A DNA stretch of 58,315 nt, the filler included, from Platydemus manokwari (Eukaryota): NCBI GenBank assembly GCA_037951405.1. It is 6 parts of 6 records of this genome, joined end to end, with 100 filler letters (N's around TTAATTAATTAA, not from the genome) between each part and the next. Parts side by side here need not be neighbours in the genome. Positions count along the whole stretch, not along the records: positions 29,591 to 39,118 come from JBBMOY011236431.1; 5 more parts are not named here. One strand, written 5' to 3'. The position numbers and the translations under genes are program-made. Each line of letters begins with the position of its first letter. Position 1 is the first letter of the stretch. This document shows positions 29,401-39,118 of this stretch, piece after piece. The notes beneath the pieces are model-generated. The model ran no database searches. It was given only the letters and a program-made list of their open reading frames with translations, and was not told the origin of the DNA.

Positions 29401-32400
29401 TCAATAATATTTTAAATTTATATTGGGTCTATAACTTAATAACCGGAATTTGACACCAGATGTAAACACTTGTGTGTGTGCTGTAGCAAANNNNNNNNNN
29501 NNNNNNNNNNNNNNNNNNNNNNNNNNNNNNNNNNTTAATTAATTAANNNNNNNNNNNNNNNNNNNNNNNNNNNNNNNNNNNNNNNNNNNNACTATGCAAA
29601 ATGTACTTTAAATAAATAAATATTTTTCAAAAAAAACCGAAATTTTAAGGTTATACACCTAATAATTTATAAAATTATTCTGTTTAGGACTTGTAATTTT
29701 TATTTGTGTTATCAGTCTCTCATTTATTGATGGAAGATCACCTTTGTCTTGATCAGTCTCTATGAGTCCTAATCAAGTCCATGATACAAACTATTAAAAC
29801 CTTTTATTTGTTTTTTTTCCACGTCACTTACAATATTATGCGATGATAATATGTGTGGCAACAATGATCTTGATGATTTTAAAACGATCAGTCTCAATTA
29901 CTATTACTACTGTATAACACTTTACTTCGATCAATGAGCATACAAGTTTGATGTACAAATATTTATTAATATAACAACAATAGCACCAAATATTAAAATG
30001 ACACTGACTTTGTTGATACACTATACAACTAATAATTATACGAAATGACCCTATAGAATTTCTTTTACTTTTTAAGGAGGATGAGGAAAAACTTGATATT
30101 AGAAGATAAACGACAGGCTATAATACTGATCGGTCGTTTAAATAAAAATCGTACTCACATTACTAATTATTGGTATATAACAATGTCTTCTTCTATGGCA
30201 ATACGTCTGTTGAAAATACGAGTGTCTAGTGGTTTCCTGGTTAATTTTAAAGGGGCAAGGTTCTGATGTTTTGAACTTCTATTTAAAGGTTTTCACGACT
30301 GGGTTTTAATCGTTCCACGTGATGATTTATTTGGGTACATTAAAGTTTTTTCCATTGGAATTTCAATTAAAATTCTATTAATTTAAAATTCTATTGATTA
30401 ATTTTCTGCCTTTGAATTATCGTTTGCAAATATAAACTATTAACCCTCATTTAATAGTATATTCAATATTATTAAATTCCGATTTATTAATTTATCACGT
30501 ATATTTTCCAAACCGTATTCTTATTATTTTTCCTTTATTGATTATCTGTCCAGAAATCCTTAAAAAGGGTGAAAATAAATTAATACATTTATATTTCCTC
30601 ATTCATAAAAAATATAACTTGTTACAATTTTCATGACTTGTTACAAATTAATACTGATAAAAATTATTACATAATAAACATGCGAGAGTATAAGATAAAA
30701 TTTTTACAATGAATTTTTCGATATTGTTCACTTCATCATCACGAAAATTATTTAAATACTGTTAATTTTTGAATATTAAAAGGATTAAAATAAAATTGAA
30801 ATTCCTATTTAAAACAGATAAAATATAAAAATGTGGGAATTTTTATATTTTAATAAAAAATGGAACACATTTAAAATTTGATTAAATATGATGTAATAAA
30901 TAATATATTTTTGTGCCGTTAAAACATGACTTCTGATTTAAATCTCGAGTATGAAGAAATTTTCCATACTAACAACGATAATCAACTCAAATAAGTCGAA
31001 CTGTAATAATGGCAGCGAAATGTAATGACATTGAATTAATAATAGCCAGTGATATAATAAAATAACCCAATGTTACTCTAATGTAGGTGGAATAAAAATG
31101 AATGAGAATAGATTAATAAACAACAATTTCCATGAATAATTCATGATTAATGAAAAAAAATTAAAATATTCTGTGAAAAATTGAGGAATGAAATTAACCC
31201 AATAAAATATTATAAAATAAAATATTAATCAAATAACACTAGAAACTCCAATTATACCTTGAAAATAATATGAATAAATTATTAATTTGGTTAGTATCTT
31301 AAGGGAATTCTTAAACAAATAAAATAGTGTTGAGGTCAAATTCGAAATCACCAAATTATTACTGTAGACTTGATTCTGAACAGCTGACTAATTACGGACT
31401 CCAAAATTTAGAGGACTATAACTTTATTTTCAAATTGCGTACTAACCATTACGACTTATAAACATACACAAACATACTCAAACTATTAAACATAAACAAA
31501 ACCTGTGTTCAAACTGGCATTTTTGGAAAGAATGGACGCTTTTTAATATATGATAGCACACAATATTAAATTTATTAATTTAAAAAAATTTTTCTAGAAC
31601 ATTTTATTAACTTTTTATTTTTTGATTTAACTAAATTAGTAAAGATTTTCTTTTAGAATTTTTCATAGAATATTTATTCAACAATTTTAATTATTTTTTA
31701 AAAAGTTTACTTTTCAATACTCAACAATAGTTTCACAAAGATCAGAACCAAACCGATTGGATTGATTTTGCCTTAATGAGACAAGGTTTCATATAAATCA
31801 AAAGCAGTTTGAAAATTATTTTCACTTAATTTTTAAACTTATTTATTTGAATTGATGTGATCTATTCATTGTGTTGTGTAATAAAAATGTTTTGTTAACA
31901 AGAGTTGGTTGGTTTTGTTACTGTCAAGCAGGTCAAAATCATTTCACATGCATAATGATCATTCATTATCATAGCATCACCGTGTGTCTGGTGAAAAAGT
32001 TGTCAATACTATTAGTGACAGATTCACAGGTTGGATTTGGAGTCAGACATTTAATTTAAACTTATAGAGCTACGTTCTCCTTGCTTTCATATAAGTGATT
32101 TAACGATATACGTGAAGAAACATCAAGTATAATGCTAAATTACTACTTGATGATCGTGGGAACTCAGAGGTTGAGATAATCCGTAAATAGGATCAATAGA
32201 GATTCCATAATAAAATAAATAATTATATAAACAAAATAAAACAAATGACCAGAAAAGTAACAGAATTATTCATTATTAAATCAGCCAATCAATTCTGATT
32301 AAGCTATCCTTTTGAGTCAGACATAAAACTAAGTCCAAAAAAAAATAATAAATAAAAAAAAATTATAGCATTTTAGTGATCGAACCGACATCATTAAAGG

Positions 32401-32520
32401 TTGTAGCTTTATTTCTATCTATCACAAAGTATCACAGATTTACAATTAGAACTTCACTTCTAAATGCACACATATTACTTAGCACGAGTTACAAATTTAA
32501 TATAATATCTCAACACGTAA

Positions 32521-32852
32521 CCAAAACTTGGCTTCCAACAGTAGACCATCTTTATATTGGTATTTATATTCGATATATGTGTGCAATTTTTTGTGTTACG
32601 CTTGTATCACATTTTGATTTGTTATTTTCTTTTCTATGTTTCTATTTGGATTATTTGTTTTGTGCATGAGTGAGATCGGTCAATCCCTATGTGTGCTTTG
32701 TTGTGTGGCTATGTCCTTTTTTCCAATTGTGAGTTACCACCTAGGTCTTCTGTGATTGGTTAATCGTTATGGCTGCAATGTTTGAAGTGCCAAAACAATG
32801 ATCACATGGTGCAAAACCGTTTTTCTTTTGTAAGACTTCCTCTTACTCAACA
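32521..32852. mobile_element. Second, inverted and diverged copy of the solo-LTR-like element at 7237-7612
   Basis: Colinear reverse-complement blocks (ccatcttta, tgtatcacattt, ggtcaatccctat, ctgtgattgg, gtgccaaa, ggtgcaa); ends in actcaaca. Confidence 0.72.
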
Positions 32853-33448
32853 TTAATGTAAGAGCAAGCTATAAATTGACCAAAAATTAAAGTGATATCA
32901 GATACCAACAATTTATTACAATGTATGATTAGAGTGTACCTTTAATGTAAAGGAAAAATTACTGCAAATATTTTTAAGATTTTCTAATTGAAACAAGTAG
33001 TAAAAAGAGAGAGAGCAAGTTATTTATGATTTTATGATTTTTTTTAATCTGCCAAACTCAACCCAATGGAGAAATTGTTAGTTGTTTAAATTTATATTCA
33101 AATATTACACCATCTGTTAAAATAAGCTGAATGTAGGACACACGGGAATAACAATGTCGATCATCTATCGCAGACTAACATTGAATATCTGTTAATGTTA
33201 TTTTATATTGACGGACTTTTATAAAAATACATAAAATCATGATTTTCCGGATAAATATTGCAATGAATTTTGCAAGACACAACAGATAATTGAATCCATA
33301 TAAAATACCAAGAAGTGTGAGATAAATAATTGAAATGTTTTATCCTAAATGCAGTGGCATTATTTTTTGATCAATATTTATGCGATGAAGACATGTTTTA
33401 ATAGAGATGAAGTGATTTCAGCGGATAATATTATGATTATCCTGTACA

Positions 33449-33685
33449 TTATTGATTGTCACCAATTCTTCTAAAGTAAATCGGCTTACGATAATTGATA
33501 AACTGCTTCTGTTGAAGACTCTCACTGGAAATAGAACTCATTGAATGCCATTTATTAGCGAATTGAAGATTGCTTCGTGATTGATATAAAGATATAGGAC
33601 GATGATCAATTGACTGCAATAAATATCGATCATTCCACTTATTAATATTATCAATTTTCATTATTCTTTCAACAAGAGAACACAT
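33449..33685 (-). CDS. Hypothetical 78-aa small protein
   Basis: True ATG and a hydrophilic, protein-like composition unlike the FILK-rich random ORFs. CCAAT box ~80 bp upstream. No recognised domain. Confidence 0.35.
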   Translation of the reverse strand: MCSLVERIMKIDNINKWNDRYLLQSIDHRPISLYQSRSNLQFANKWHSMSSISSESLQQKQFINYRKPIYFRRIGDNQ

Positions 33686-35478
33686 TTGAATTAATGCTCA
33701 AAACCCGATTACAATGAATGGAAAAAGTATCGGTTATTAGTGAAATATTACATGTTTTCTGTGATTGGCTGAATTATTGTTGACATACAAGCTGATACGT
33801 AAACAATCAACATCATAAATGATGATTGAAAATAATGATGTATGTGGGCTAGAAAATTTATCAATTCTCAAGGAAATGTTTAACATAGGGAAAAGTGTGA
33901 CCTTTTATTCTTTTGATTTGTGGATGGTTTGTGTAGAAACTGGAAAACAGAAGCAGCAGTCATTATGTAATTCAACCCGTTAATAATAATTCAATTTTAA
34001 TTATAATTTATGGCAATATTAGACTGTCAAAGTTTTAAAAATAATACAATAGAACAGACAATATAAAACAATATGAACACTAGCGGCTTTTTGTATATTT
34101 ATCAGTATTGTCAAAGTCGATAATGTCCTACTGCATAAATTAATTAGTTAACCTATTCAGAGTTTAGTTATAATATTATATTTTTTCATATCAATAATAA
34201 TAGACATTAAAATCGTTACTGTGAATGATAGTTTCGATGTGGAAAGAATTCACAAGGTTTCAGTGGATGTAAGAATGTAAATAAGTTGTTGAATAAAATA
34301 ATCTAACTAAATGAAAACAATTGGTAAAATATTAGTAAAATTAATAAAATTTAGAAATTGATTTTCGAAAAATATGTAAAATTACCGTAAAAACATAATT
34401 AAAATAAATTATTTTTATTGGATAATCTTATCCAATGAATTTCAAGATAAATTGTAGAAAATCAATAAAATTCCTGATTGATTTCAAAATATCAAATCAT
34501 TCGATATAAGCTTCTGAATAAAGTGTGAAATGAAAATATTAGTAGATCTCACAAAGAATTTCGAAACTCTGTTTTTTCTTCCGAAATTGATAAGTAAAAC
34601 ATTATAAATTCATAGGTTTAACAATGGATATTTCGATAAACATGAAACAGAATCAAGTAAAAATTAATTATTAGAACCAAAATAATCTACAGAAGGATGT
34701 ATATTCAATCTACTTTAAACAATTGAAGAGTGATCATAATGATGAACCCTTGGGTTGATAAAAATATCGAGGAAAATTTTCTCATAAAAAGTTCACGGGA
34801 AGAAATGTTTTAATGTTTTGAATGAAATATTCACTATCAGTACGATGTAAATATTTAAAACATTCCTTCAAATTATAAAAGATTTATTCAGGTCATAAGA
34901 TGTGTTACAGACGTTATAATATATACAATGAGATTACACCATGTAAAATCTTGAGAAAATATTCAATGTAGCTTCGACATCCTTTATCTTTTAATGAATC
35001 CGGTATCGAATTTTGTTGAAAATTCGCAATCAATTTCTAAAAATCATTCGATTATGTCGAGGCTAATTGTTAATAAATATTTCTTTAAATTATATTTATA
35101 AAATTATAATTATTAATCATCTAACCAATATTATAAAACTTAATAACAGGCGATCTTGAAGTGGGATTGGACAAAATTATCAAGCGCAGTAAGATAAGTA
35201 CTCAAAAACAGCATGACAGTTATACACAGTAATAACATTTGTGCACCAAACAAATCAAATTGAAATTAATTATACAATTATGACTTTTATGATAAGGTAG
35301 ACGAAAATAAAATTACGCAAGAATAGATGATACTTTATTCCATTCAGTCTCTATAGAAACAATCACTATAGTTACTCATATCAAAAAATTCAGTGGAAAC
35401 AAAAGTTATGAATGTAACCATAAATCGATAAAAAGATAAGATAAAATTTTATTCATACAAAATATAATCTAAACTAAT

Positions 35479-36765
35479 TTATACTTCAGTTATAAAATCT
35501 TCATAATTAATGAAAATTCGTTCACCATTGTTTACATCGAAATAAAATCGGTTCCCTAAATCTTTCTTCAAGTATGTTTTGAGACCGGTGCTTTGATTGT
35601 TGATAAATATTTTCCCATTGATTTCTTGCTTTAAATAATGTTTTTCACCTGATAAATCAAAGAAAAACAATCGCCCATTGATTTCCTTTTTCAAACGCAA
35701 TTTATGGCAATTAGATGAATGACAAAATTCATTTCCATCGCTACTTGATTTCGGTTGAACGAAAAGATGTTCGTATAAATTTTCATTGTAGTTATCATTG
35801 ACATTGAAGAGTTTCGGCGAACTATAAATGTATTCATTTTCCAAATGCGATTGACGGATATTTTTGTTTCTTTCACCCTCGAAATTCATATAAACAGCAT
35901 CATATGCACTACAAATCATCGACGGTTGTTTCGATTGTAAATTCATACCAAACGAGTTCACAGATAAGCTCGGCCTAACATCGTACACTGGCGGCACCAT
36001 AGACACTTTACACATTTCTTCAACTTGATTTGATGTTAAGGATGAAACTTGAGTTCCTGGATGATTTTTGTTCAATTCGGGTTTATTTGTATAAAGGCGT
36101 TTATAAATACAAATTCCGATAACGATTATTATTAAAAATATAAGACACCATATCACCACCAATATTGTGATTTGAATTGGCAAATTCAGTCGTTCAAATA
36201 ACGAGTAAAGTTGATAGATGCCTCCATTATCCGTTTGTGCTTCCAAAGGAAAATTCGTTAACGATCTATCAGTTTTCTTGAATAATTCGACCGTGCTGGT
36301 AAAAATTTTATTTTTTTCGAATCTCATAACATTTGAAACGAAATTTTTCCTGTTCTCCACACTACCAACTCGAAAGAAATAAACCGTCAATGTCATGCCA
36401 TCGGCATAATTATTAAATCGAATCTCTACTCTTATCGAATTGTTATTTTTTGCAACACCTTCGATTTTCATATATGATTTTTCCATGGTTTCAATTGGAA
36501 AATAATTGGCTTGTGAAACAACGATCACATTAGCTACTGGCATTTCGTCTCTGTGGATTGTAAAAACCAATTCCGACATATCGTTTTTGTCGGTTTGTGA
36601 AAAATTGTATTGGAAAATAAATGTCTCATGGTCTAGAATTGGGAAATTTCGGAGAATTGCATATGGTTCACGTGCAATAGGTTGGACTTTATTTTCAGAA
36701 TATCGACGGCATAATTCCACGAAATTGAAATAAAATATTAAAAACACGAAAACAGAATTTAGCAT
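35479..36765 (-). CDS. Intronless 428-aa single-pass type I membrane protein of unknown family
   Basis: 1287-nt ATG-initiated ORF in very AT-rich DNA. N-terminal hydrophobic signal peptide, ~175-aa beta-rich ectodomain, TM helix ITILVVIWCLIFLIIIVIGICIY followed by KR, Tyr-motif tail, and C-terminal ITEV. Confidence 0.85.
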   Translation of the reverse strand: MLNSVFVFLIFYFNFVELCRRYSENKVQPIAREPYAILRNFPILDHETFIFQYNFSQTDKNDMSELVFTIHRDEMPVANVIVVSQANYFPIETMEKSYMKIEGVAKNNNSIRVEIRFNNYADGMTLTVYFFRVGSVENRKNFVSNVMRFEKNKIFTSTVELFKKTDRSLTNFPLEAQTDNGGIYQLYSLFERLNLPIQITILVVIWCLIFLIIIVIGICIYKRLYTNKPELNKNHPGTQVSSLTSNQVEEMCKVSMVPPVYDVRPSLSVNSFGMNLQSKQPSMICSAYDAVYMNFEGERNKNIRQSHLENEYIYSSPKLFNVNDNYNENLYEHLFVQPKSSSDGNEFCHSSNCHKLRLKKEINGRLFFFDLSGEKHYLKQEINGKIFINNQSTGLKTYLKKDLGNRFYFDVNNGERIFINYEDFITEV

Positions 36766-37689
36766 TGAATTTTTTTAATTATAAAATTAAAACAAAGATT
36801 ATGTTCTTATTAATAATATTGAAATTTAAATCAATTCAAAATTATTGAAATCGAATTTAAAATGAATTTTAAAATAATTTCAAAACTCGTTCGCTTATAA
36901 AATTCTAAAAAGAAAGCATGTTAATTGTCTAAATTAGTTATTCTTATAGAACTCTTTGCTACATAACATTAATAAATTTTATTTTACTTTTTTAAAAATT
37001 ATTTAAAATTACAGCCATAACAAAATGGTTAGATAGCAAATCAGCGATGAGATTTCTTAATACCAAAAGCAAAAGAAACAGCTGCAAGAACAGGGAAACA
37101 CAAGACTCTATTTACAATATCTCTACAATGTATTGTTATTTAAGATTTTGAATATGATTTCCGCGCCACATTCACATAAACCAGTAGTTACATTTCCTGC
37201 TGTTTATAATAAGTGTATACTAGAAGCGTACAAAGTAAGAATTTTAAATGCATGCTACATCGCAGAAAAGTTGAAATCAGTGTTTTAATTAAAAATGGAA
37301 ACTTTTGTAAAATAAAAATTGAATGATATACTATATCTAGGAGTTTGAAGCAGGGCAAATAAAGAATACCAAAACCATATGTATACACTGACTAAGCTTG
37401 TGTGATAAGTCATGGATTATACTCTGAAGTATTTGCAACAAATATTATTATTTTGTGAAGCCATGATAACACAACAAACTATTGTTAGAATTCCTAACGT
37501 TCTCATTTTATTAGTATCAGAAAGAATTTGATATATATCTAATTATAATTCCGTGTTGCTTGATTTCACTTGACCTAACTATATTATTTTATATTTTCTT
37601 CATAACGGTAGTAATCACTTTGGATTTTTTACATAAATTTACGTTTTTTGACGAAATCTTAAATCTCATTTACTAAATATTTGATTTTA

Positions 37690-38290
37690 ACATAAATAAA
37701 ATGGCTTTCGAGTTCTTTCTAAGAATAAATTCTTTACCATACAAGTGATGGTTAATGTGATGACAGAAATTATATGTTCCTGTCTATCGATAAAACATCA
37801 TTTTTCATAGTCATCTTTTAGCAATAGAACCATCACTATTCTGGGTATCGGAGTCGATAAATTTTTTGAAGCTTTTTTAAATTTCTCTGTTATGTGTCTT
37901 GATTTAGCTCTGCCCTTGATGTGTCTGCTATAGCCCTTGATTTTTGTGTTCCATGTATAAATATTCTCTAGTAGCCATTAATTTCTAATTCCTTATCTCT
38001 CCTGATTGCAATACGTTTCACAGTGTTCTCGATATTGTGTCTGATTAAATTTCTCAAAACCCATCTTTGTAGCCGTTCTCGTCTCAAACATAGCACGGTA
38101 CAACCATTGGATTATTGTACTTTCTTGATATATGTTCTGAATTGTTAATAGTTGTCCTGGTAATTATTCTCTTTATCTACTTCTTTACCGTATGGCTTGT
38201 TTTACTTCTTCTTATCCATTAATATTATCTCATTATGTTCACATGCTTGACCTAGCCCAACATTTTGACATAGTAATATTAAAATATCGT
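37690..38290 (-). pseudogene. Decayed coding-like relic, probably TE-derived or env-like
   Basis: Minus frame IQWLYRAMFETRTATKMGFEKFNQTQYREHCETYCNQER*GIRN*WLLENIYTWNTKIKGYSRH continues through isolated stops. Confidence 0.25.
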
Positions 38291-39040
38291 TAACAAATTT
38301 TGAAAAACTTTTCGATTAGGTTCCATACTATGTATTTCTCTATCATTAGTCTTTTTCGTTGTTGTCGGTACTTGTAAAATCTATTCTGACTTCGTTTTTA
38401 TCACAAATCACAGGCACATGTTGAGATTTGTTTATATTTGAAATTGATGTAAAATATGCCATTCATGATAATTATTTTTATTGTTTTATAAAAAATCATA
38501 ATTTTTAAGATAAATGTAAAAATAAATGTTAAAATAAATCTAATACAAATAAAAAGTTAATTAAAAAATAATATATATATATATATATATATTAAAAAAA
38601 TTGAATAAAAAATTGAATAAAAATTAAATTTAAATTATGAAAATATAATGATAAATGAAAATAAAAATCAGAAAAGTTAGAAATAAAACAGATTATTTTT
38701 AAGTAATTTGATTCTAAGTATTTTTGATTTTAAAATTAATAAATTATATTAATTAATTATATTATGATAATTATATCAATCATTTTTATATTTATATTAA
38801 AATCGTATGCTGTCACCAATCTGCGAAGGAAATCGACGAAGTTATAATTGTAGTTTATTTATCCTAATTTATTCTGATTTAAACTGGTTCATTAGATGAA
38901 TATGTTTTGGAAGCGATTGAAAGGAACATTTATAAGTATGCAATGTGATTTTAAATTTAGTTGTAATAATCAATTACATGATTGACAGACACTGAAGAAG
39001 TAAACCTTATAATGATTATATTTACTGTCCTTATAACTAC

Positions 39041-39055
39041 ATTTATTATTATTGC

Positions 39056-39118
<63 letters not shown>
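39041..39118. repeat. (ATT)n microsatellite running into a linker
   Basis: Directly visible. Confidence 0.95.

What the first reader, a model, noticed from the sequence alone, without database searches (positions are those of the whole stretch)
35479..36765. Intronless orphan receptor-like protein with a phosphotyrosine docking tail and PDZ ligand
Seen: signal peptide, ~175-aa ectodomain with almost no Cys, one TM helix, and a ~205-aa cytoplasmic tail with PVYDVRP, AYDAV, VYMNF, EYIYSSP and NLYEHL, ending -ITEV. Established: YxN binds Grb2-type SH2, YxxP is an Abl/Crk-type motif, YxxL/V recruits SHP2-like SH2, and T-x-V-COOH is a class I PDZ ligand. Inference: a kinase-less signalling, immune or adhesion receptor or adaptor that I cannot assign to a known family. 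It is single-exon in a neighbourhood of multi-intron genes, suggesting a lineage-specific or retroposed origin.
Basis: partly seen in the sequence, partly recalled or inferred. Interest (0 to 1): 0.72.

Follow-up and report, generated by a model that had tools for sequence, protein, structure and literature searches.

The report
Orphan single-pass membrane protein gene

Summary
The ORF is real: 428 codons on the minus strand (35479-36765). No other ORF in the piece exceeds 97 aa, and 200 simulated sequences never gave an open frame above 156 codons. It has a signal-peptide-like start, an ectodomain of about 179 aa without Cys, one strong TM helix (about 199-221) and a 207-aa tail ending ITEV.

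It matches no Pfam, NCBIfam or PDB sequence family. A search of 1.84 billion representatives found six hits. Four are ectodomain relatives, about 35% identical, known only as metagenome singletons. A profile search added a full-length 338-aa homolog, P0007.

Two parts are conserved: the ectodomain (a modelled beta-sandwich with only generic fold matches) and the last ~70 residues. These form three ~20-aa beta-hairpin repeats resembling bacterial choline-binding and PBCV-adaptor-type repeats.

The motifs occur at chance frequency (4 seen, 2.2 expected, P=0.14). ITEV is replaced by FLM, while NYEDF just before it is conserved.

Verdict: a new, lineage-restricted type I membrane protein family of unknown function. 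Phosphotyrosine/PDZ signalling is unsupported, and there are no retroposition hallmarks. Expression and source organism could not be tested.

The parts
35479..36765 (-). Complete single-exon CDS, 428 aa plus TAA stop
   Evidence: the open frame of 431 codons compares with a maximum of 156 in 200 simulations. An in-frame stop lies 4 codons upstream of the ATG.
36709..36765 (-). N-terminal hydrophobic segment (residues 1-19), signal-peptide-like
   Evidence: KD 1.81. It aligns with the N-terminal hydrophobic segments of P0001, P0002 and P0007, which end in a V-N-A type cleavage motif. No dedicated signal-peptide predictor was available.
36196..36672 (-). Conserved ectodomain (residues 32-190), modelled as a beta-sandwich without Cys
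   Evidence: 32-36% identity to P0001, P0002, P0003, P0005 and P0007. In the AF2 model the strands span 35-131 and 159-163, with pLDDT 70-82 in the core. Fold matches are generic only, best Z 6.5.
36103..36171 (-). Transmembrane helix (residues about 199-221)
   Evidence: KD up to 3.5. AF2 helix 195-226 at pLDDT 82-86. A hydrophobic segment sits at the same position in the homologs.
35710..36084 (-).
   Evidence: pLDDT below 40 for residues 223-332. It does not align with P0007 and is about 90 residues longer than there. Motif count is at chance level.
35491..35709 (-). Conserved C-terminal beta-hairpin repeat domain (residues 353-425): three ~20-aa units ending in the conserved FINYEDF
   Evidence: 39% identity to the C-terminus of P0007. 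pLDDT 66-84 with 7-8 strands. Matches P0004 (E 2.1e-9) and P0006 (E 5.4e-5) in the whole-library search, at z = 10.3 and 8.6 over composition shuffles.
35602..35695 (-). DNA-level trace of internal duplication: 34-nt copies at 35602-35635 and 35662-35695, 60 nt apart
   Evidence: 74% identity, with a spacing of exactly 20 codons. The copies correspond to the two EING-containing hairpin units.
35482..35493 (-). Terminal I-T-E-V (residues 425-428); has the form of a class I PDZ ligand but is not conserved
   Evidence: for the sequence. P0007 ends F-L-M.

Best explanation
This is an intact, intron-free gene for a member of a small, fast-evolving, lineage-restricted family of type I single-pass membrane proteins. 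Shown or modelled here: a signal-peptide-like start; a Cys-free ectodomain of about 160 aa modelled as a beta-sandwich; one TM helix; a disordered linker that varies in length and sequence; and a conserved ~70-aa C-terminal module of three beta-hairpin repeats ending in FINYEDF. Inferred function: the ectodomain binds an extracellular or luminal ligand. The conserved cytosolic hairpin module, not the linker's tyrosines, couples the protein to a cytosolic partner or to the membrane surface. The conserved Y-E-D-F (YxxPhi form) near the C-terminus may serve as an adaptor-protein sorting signal. The Tyr-containing strings and the ITEV end are species-specific features of a rapidly drifting linker and terminus, without evidence of function.
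For: Reality of the gene. Architecture. Family: the exhaustive HMMER search found P0001, P0002, P0003 and P0005 over residues 32-234 (E 3e-25 to 1e-8). The profile search added P0007 (338 aa), which has the same order of parts. Conservation is confined to residues 35-~190 and 356-425. The tail model has pLDDT below 40 for 223-332 and 66-84 for about 353-422, with hairpin strands. The repeat similarity to P0004 (which carries PF08789) and to P0006 (choline-binding repeats) lies well above composition shuffles. A 60-nt-spaced DNA repeat shows internal duplication. K/R-rich sequence after the TM places the C-terminus in the cytosol. The other organism holds several paralogs, including a broken copy, as expected of a fast-evolving family.
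Against: No expression data: the single run holding the sequence is not RNA and is probably the source assembly. Both structure models rest on very shallow alignments (5 and 2 sequences) and are only moderately confident (mean pLDDT 65.6 and 47.9). No fold match is specific (best Z 6.5 for the ectodomain, 4.5 for the tail), so the binding function is inference from architecture alone. In the model FINY is part of a beta-strand, so YEDF may be structural and not an exposed sorting signal. The homologs come from apparently one other organism and may be paralogs, not orthologs, so loss of the motifs there does not strictly exclude a species-specific signalling role. The signal peptide was judged by hydrophobicity and alignment, not by a dedicated predictor.
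Confidence: 0.6

Rival explanations
1. One reading: a kinase-less receptor or adaptor. Its disordered tail would be tyrosine-phosphorylated and recruit SH2 proteins (Grb2-, Crk/Abl- and SHP2-type), and its T-E-V end would bind a PDZ scaffold.
For: YDAV, YMN, YSSP and YEHL lie in a segment predicted disordered, hence accessible. The end fits [ST]-x-V.
Against: The motif count is at chance (4 against 2.2, P=0.14) and Tyr is not enriched in the linker. PVYDVRP does not fit YxxP. The motif-bearing segment is unaligned and about 90 residues shorter in P0007, which ends FLM. YEHL abuts a strand that the model adds to the C-terminal sheet. The source organism is unknown, so even the presence of SH2, PTK or PDZ machinery is unverified.
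Confidence: 0.12
2. A p24/GOLD-like cargo or sorting receptor of the secretory or endolysosomal pathway. A luminal beta-sandwich would bind cargo, and the cytosolic tail would carry a sorting signal (conserved YEDF) near the C-terminus.
For: The architecture is signal peptide, beta-sandwich, short helical stalk, TM, then tail. The model matches GOLD domains of p24delta1 (Z 5.6, rmsd 2.6 over 75 residues) and TMED1 (Z 5.1), and the GOLD-like GPR180 N-domain (Z 5.0). NYEDF is conserved near the C-terminus.
Against: Those Z values tie with dozens of unrelated beta-sandwiches. There is no Pfam EMP24/GOLD hit even at E 10. The GOLD Cys pair is absent, since the ectodomain has no Cys. The tail is 207 aa, against about a dozen residues in p24 proteins (that figure is from general knowledge).
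Confidence: 0.13
3. A non-functional or untranscribed ORF: a recently dead pseudogene, or a transposon- or virus-derived envelope-like gene.
For: No expression evidence. At least one copy in the other organism is broken. No other recognisable gene lies in the 9.5-kb piece.
Against: A 428-codon frame in 27% GC DNA cannot survive long without selection. Domain-wise conservation at about 35% identity with a distant homolog indicates purifying selection on two folded parts. There are no gag/pol-like ORFs or Pfam hits beside it and no relatives in viral contigs.
Confidence: 0.08

Closest known systems
Metagenome proteins P0007, P0001, P0002, P0003 and P0005 (unnamed singletons from ENA and JGI; loci L001 and L002 from JGI metagenome Ga0307474)
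   Same: True family members. They share the N-terminal signal segment, the ectodomain at 32-36% identity, and the TM position. In P0007 the three C-terminal hairpin repeats and FINYEDF are also shared.
   Different: P0007 ends FLM. Several copies are short or broken. None is annotated or characterised.
Bacterial and viral beta-hairpin repeats: PBCV-specific basic adaptor domain (PF08789, as in P0004) and choline-binding repeats (PF01473/PF19127, as in P0006 and pneumococcal LytA)
   Same: The C-terminal residues 340-420 share the periodic pattern (polar-x-N-G-basic, an aromatic-rich strand, a turn, a second strand ending Y-L/I). Scores are E 2.1e-9 and 5.4e-5 across the whole library, z about 9-10 over shuffles, and weak LytA hits in PDB at E 0.09-1.9.
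   Different: The window protein itself reaches no Pfam threshold for these families, even at E 10. It lacks the G-W and W-Y-Y signature of choline-binding repeats (read directly from the sequence). The domain sits on the predicted cytosolic side of a eukaryotic membrane protein, whereas the bacterial repeats are extracellular. No specific structural match.
p24/TMED GOLD-domain cargo receptors
   Same: Signal peptide, beta-sandwich, stalk, one TM, cytosolic tail. GOLD domains appear among the fold matches at Z 5.0-5.6.
   Different: No sequence-family match, no Cys pair, and a tail roughly twenty times longer with a folded domain.
Single-pass Ig V-set adhesion or immune receptors with ITIM/ITAM-type tails
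   Same: Foldseek's top matches are V-type Ig domains, including the sodium-channel beta subunit; the VIA-align search lists nectin and CAR D1. The protein is single-pass with Tyr-containing tail strings.
   Different: Foldseek E is never better than 1e-2, with TM-score about 0.5 on the target only. There is no intradomain Cys pair, no ITAM spacing, and the Tyr strings are not conserved.

Membership tests
PBCV-specific basic adaptor domain (PF08789) | Score above the Pfam gathering threshold (20.4 bits) for the profile | tested here: not met
   hmmscan of the whole protein and of the C-terminal 100 and 200 aa at E up to 10 does not list PF08789. The link is indirect, through P0004, which scores 43.3 bits and matches the query at E 2.1e-9.
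Choline-binding / cell-wall-binding repeats (PF01473, PF19127) | Profile match, and the ~20-aa repeat with conserved G-W and aromatic W-Y-Y residues that form choline sites | tested here: not met
   No Pfam hit. Only weak phmmer hits to LytA chains, E 0.09-1.9. The protein has a single Trp, and it lies in the TM helix. P0006 matches at E 5.4e-5.
p24/TMED (EMP24_GP25L / GOLD) | GOLD-domain profile match, conserved luminal Cys pair, short cytosolic tail with a di-basic or FF motif | tested here: not met
   No Pfam hit. No Cys in the ectodomain. The tail is 207 aa. Structural Z of 5.6 is not above background.
Immunoglobulin superfamily V-set receptor | Ig profile match, the B-F strand disulfide, and a specific fold match | tested here: not met
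   No Pfam Ig hit. No Cys pair. Best Foldseek E is 1.1e-2.
Phosphotyrosine docking receptor or transmembrane adaptor (ITIM/ITAM/LAT-like) | Tyr-based motifs conserved among homologs and more frequent than composition predicts | tested here: not met
   4 observed against 2.2 expected, P=0.14. The motif region is unaligned and shorter in P0007.
Phosphotyrosine docking receptor or transmembrane adaptor (ITIM/ITAM/LAT-like) | The protein is actually tyrosine-phosphorylated, and SH2 proteins and tyrosine kinases exist in the organism | not testable with these tools
   The source organism is coded or unknown. No proteome or phosphoproteome is available.
Class I PDZ ligand | [S/T]-x-[V/L/I] at the free C-terminus, conserved in homologs | tested here: inconclusive
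   The form is met in the window protein (T-E-V). It is not conserved in the one full-length homolog (F-L-M), which may be a paralog.
Methyltransf_FA domain (PF12248) | Pfam profile match | tested here: not met
   This is only a language-model lead at 0.82 for residues 20-198, a level that a third of shuffled proteins reach. No Pfam hit at E up to 10.
Processed retrogene | 3' poly(A) remnant, flanking target-site duplications, and an intron-containing parent gene | tested here: not met
   No poly(A) tract after the stop. Flanking direct repeats are only short AT-rich chance-like pairs. A parent gene could not be sought because only this piece is available. The homolog's CDS is also uninterrupted.

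The most novel reading that the evidence does not exclude
The family defines a new kind of eukaryotic single-pass receptor. Its conserved cytosolic effector would be a choline-binding or PBCV-adaptor-type beta-hairpin repeat module, a type otherwise known from bacterial surface proteins and giant-virus proteins. It could have been acquired by horizontal transfer and re-used inside the cell, for example to dock the tail on phosphocholine-type lipid headgroups or on a repeat-binding partner.
Probability: 0.12. Interest if true: 0.6.

Novelty: new variant of a known kind. Interest (0 to 1): 0.33.

Why it matters
The practical value is a correction. A plausible story built from short linear motifs (SH2 and PDZ docking) does not survive a chance test or a single homolog comparison. 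If the gene is expressed, it represents an unannotated, taxonomically narrow membrane protein family. Its cytosolic beta-hairpin repeat module is related in pattern to bacterial and viral repeats, which would be an unusual use of that repeat type. Orphan single-pass membrane proteins are common in eukaryotic genomes, so without expression or functional data this is of modest interest.

Tried and rejected
- **Family and sequence searches on the window protein.** Pfam, NCBIfam and PDB sequence searches gave nothing usable. The word-based homolog search with the whole protein gave nothing.
- **ESM Atlas.** The whole protein gave no usable hit. The ectodomain gave only a 0.82 Methyltransf_FA lead, not confirmed by Pfam.
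- **Fold searches.** Both models returned only generic beta-sandwich or beta-meander matches.
- **Collection scans.** Viral contigs hold no relatives. Prokaryotic genomes hold no relatives of P0004, so the source of the closest repeat protein remains unknown. A literature search for the PBCV basic adaptor domain found no papers.
- **Expression.** One sequencing run holds the stretch. It is not recorded as RNA and is probably the source assembly. Laying its contigs gave no usable coverage over the ORF and no variants; the tool warns that holes prove nothing.
- **Paralogs and other features in the piece.** tblastn found no paralogs. There are no tRNA or Rfam features. Other open frames of the piece have no Pfam match. 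The bacterial promoter and terminator scan is uninformative for a eukaryote.
- **Alignment set aside.** An alignment of the tail with the whole of P0004 (A4) was a poor global alignment and was not used for modelling.

Full report
**1. The observation**

The piece (29591-39118) is AT-rich, with GC of 0.18-0.33. It holds one outstanding open reading frame, on the minus strand at 35479-36765: 428 aa from ATG to TAA.

- An in-frame TAA lies four codons upstream of the ATG.
- The longest stop-free run in the piece is 431 codons. In 200 Markov-1 simulations of the same piece the mean was 98 and the maximum 156.
- The next longest ORF is 97 aa.
- GC rises over the ORF, and codon-position GC is 0.38, 0.275 and 0.32 for positions 1, 2 and 3.

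- a hydrophobic N-terminus (residues 1-19);
- an ectodomain of about 179 aa with no Cys at all;
- one very hydrophobic segment at about 199-221, followed by K/R-rich sequence, so the C-terminus should be cytosolic;
- a 207-aa tail containing the quoted strings and ending ITEV.

One quoted string, PVYDVRP, has Pro at +4, so it is not a YxxP motif.

**2. Relatives**

Searches with the window protein itself found no known family:

- Pfam at E up to 10 gave nothing meaningful.
- NCBIfam gave nothing.
- PDB sequences gave only weak hits, to pneumococcal LytA choline-binding domains at E 0.09-1.9 over residues 343-423.
- The word-based homolog search gave nothing.
- The ESM Atlas gave no usable hit for the whole protein.

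The exhaustive HMMER search of 1.84 billion cluster representatives returned six proteins.

- P0001, P0002, P0003 and P0005 match residues 32-234 at 34-36% identity (E 3e-25 to 1e-8).
- P0004 (696 aa) and P0006 (2253 aa) match only residues 340-420 (E 2.1e-9 and 5.4e-5).
- P0001, P0002, P0003, P0005 and P0004 were looked up and are unnamed singleton clusters from ENA or JGI metagenome assemblies on contigs of 0.6-8.7 kb. The window protein itself is not in the collection.

A profile of the ectodomain alignment (A1) then found P0007. It is 338 aa and has the same order of parts: signal segment, ectodomain, TM, a shorter linker, and a C-terminus that aligns with the window protein's last 70 residues at 39% identity.

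A scan of JGI metagenomes recovered two contigs from one metagenome, Ga0307474.

- L002 encodes the C-terminal 196 residues of P0007 exactly.
- L001 is the P0003 copy. It is broken by frame changes and stops, including a decayed C-terminal repeat.

So the other organism carries several paralogs, some degenerate. Its contigs are also AT-rich (GC 0.25-0.29). No relatives occur in viral contigs.

**3. What is conserved and what is not**

Conservation is confined to two blocks.

- The ectodomain, residues about 35-190. Invariant positions include F117, G123, M124, L126, Y129, G134, K140, F142, N145, F149, N152, K153 and I154.
- The C-terminal residues 356-425, ending in the shared FINYEDF.

P0007 ends FLM, not TEV.

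Tyr makes up 5.0-5.5% of each part of the protein. The caveat is that the homologs may be paralogs.

**4. Structure models**

*Residues 1-235* (five-sequence alignment; mean pLDDT 65.6, core blocks 70-82). The model shows an N-terminal helix, eight beta-strands between 35 and 163 forming a sandwich, and a TM helix at 195-226.

- Foldseek against PDB gave nothing at E of 1e-3 or better. The top rows are Ig V-type domains at E about 1e-2.
- The Foldseek-independent search gave a best Z of 6.5. A flat list followed: phage tail-fibre and tailspike domains, Csp protease domains, p24 and TMED GOLD domains (Z 5.6 and 5.1), CBMs, galectins, SIDT and GPR180 N-domains.

By the tool's own calibration this is background for a common beta-sandwich arrangement, so no specific family can be assigned.

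*Residues 223-428* (two-sequence alignment).

- pLDDT is below 40 for residues 223-332. I read this as disorder.
- pLDDT is 66-84 for about 353-422, with 7-8 short strands arranged as hairpins.
- Fold searches gave nothing specific (best Z 4.5).

**5. The C-terminal module**

Reading the sequence directly, the module is three units of about 20 residues. Each unit is a hairpin: polar-x-N-G-basic, an aromatic-rich strand, a turn, and a second strand ending Y-L or F-I.

- Two adjacent units are still recognisable at the DNA level: 34-nt copies exactly 60 nt apart, 74% identical. This indicates internal duplication.
- P0004 carries repeats scored by Pfam as the PBCV-specific basic adaptor domain (PF08789, 43.3 bits). 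P0006 is a choline-binding-repeat / GH25 protein.
- The window module aligns to several registers of the P0004 repeats at 27-38% identity.
- Its best BLAST scores against P0004 and P0006 lie 10.3 and 8.6 standard deviations above 500 composition-preserving shuffles. The resemblance is therefore in the pattern, not just in composition.
- The window protein does not itself reach any Pfam threshold for these families, and it lacks the Trp signature of choline-binding repeats.

I therefore describe the module as 'like' these repeats and do not file it as a member. Whether the likeness reflects common descent or convergence of hairpin repeats is open. Neither GTDB genomes nor the literature search added information.

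**6. Interpretation**

The best-supported reading is a bona fide gene for a lineage-restricted type I membrane protein.

- Its selected parts are a beta-sandwich ectodomain and a small folded cytosolic hairpin-repeat module.
- These are joined by a fast-drifting disordered linker.
- By architecture it is receptor-like. The ectodomain presumably binds something outside the cell or in a lumen.
- The conserved cytosolic module is the likely coupling device, to a protein partner or to the membrane surface.
- The only Tyr-based string conserved between the two full-length proteins is Y-E-D-F at the very end, which has the YxxPhi form of adaptor-complex sorting signals (general knowledge). In the model it partly belongs to the last strand, so it may simply be structural.

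These functional steps are inference. Nothing here tests binding, localisation or phosphorylation.

**7. Rivals**

- The phosphotyrosine/PDZ model is weakened as described in section 3.
- A p24-like cargo-receptor model shares the layout and appears among the fold matches, but fails every defining feature tested.
- A dead or silent ORF is unlikely, given the length of the frame in AT-rich DNA and the domain-wise conservation. It cannot be excluded without RNA data.
- A transposon or viral envelope gene has no support. There are no gag/pol-like frames or Pfam hits beside it and no viral relatives.
- Retroposition hallmarks are absent, and the homolog's CDS is also uninterrupted.

**8. Limits**

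- The source organism is unknown to me; the run's organism is coded.
- The single run that holds the stretch is not recorded as RNA, and laying its contigs was uninformative over the ORF.
- Only this 9.5-kb piece could be examined.

**9. Verdict**

This is a new, narrowly distributed family of a familiar general kind, a single-pass membrane protein with a beta-sandwich ectodomain. Its unusual feature is a conserved cytosolic hairpin-repeat module. Interest is modest.

Noticed in passing
window 34423-34499: Many different contigs of the one public run pile up on this ~75-nt stretch (summed depth up to 111, against about 15 beside it), with loose ends on both sides. It looks like a short dispersed repeat about 1 kb downstream of the gene.
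   Followed up: no
window 39043-39118: A (TTA)n microsatellite of about 25 copies at the edge of the piece. There are also several AT-rich minisatellite-like arrays at 38498-38780.
   Followed up: no
L001:1-1018: A family copy (the P0003 gene) whose N-terminal, middle and C-terminal parts lie in three different frames, with stops. The remnant of the C-terminal repeat is decayed. It is either a pseudogene or an error-prone metagenome assembly.
   Followed up: partly
L002:770-943 (minus strand): A 57-aa ORF downstream of the P0007 gene. It weakly resembles the extreme C-terminus of Sleeping Beauty (Tc1-type) transposase (E 0.57, chain positions 181-230 of 230), with no Pfam support. This is only a lead that the other organism is a eukaryote with Tc1-like relics.
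   Followed up: partly
window 33452-33697 (minus strand): An 82-codon open frame in a slightly GC-richer stretch (32591-34090, GC 0.28-0.31). It has no Pfam match, so it may be chance or a small exon of another gene.
   Followed up: partly
P0004 (ENA metagenome protein, 696 aa): The closest carrier of the hairpin repeats has a lipoprotein-like signal, about ten PBCV-adaptor-type repeats and an unassigned ~300-aa C-terminal region. It has no relatives in 185,579 prokaryotic species genomes by the pattern scan.
   Followed up: partly
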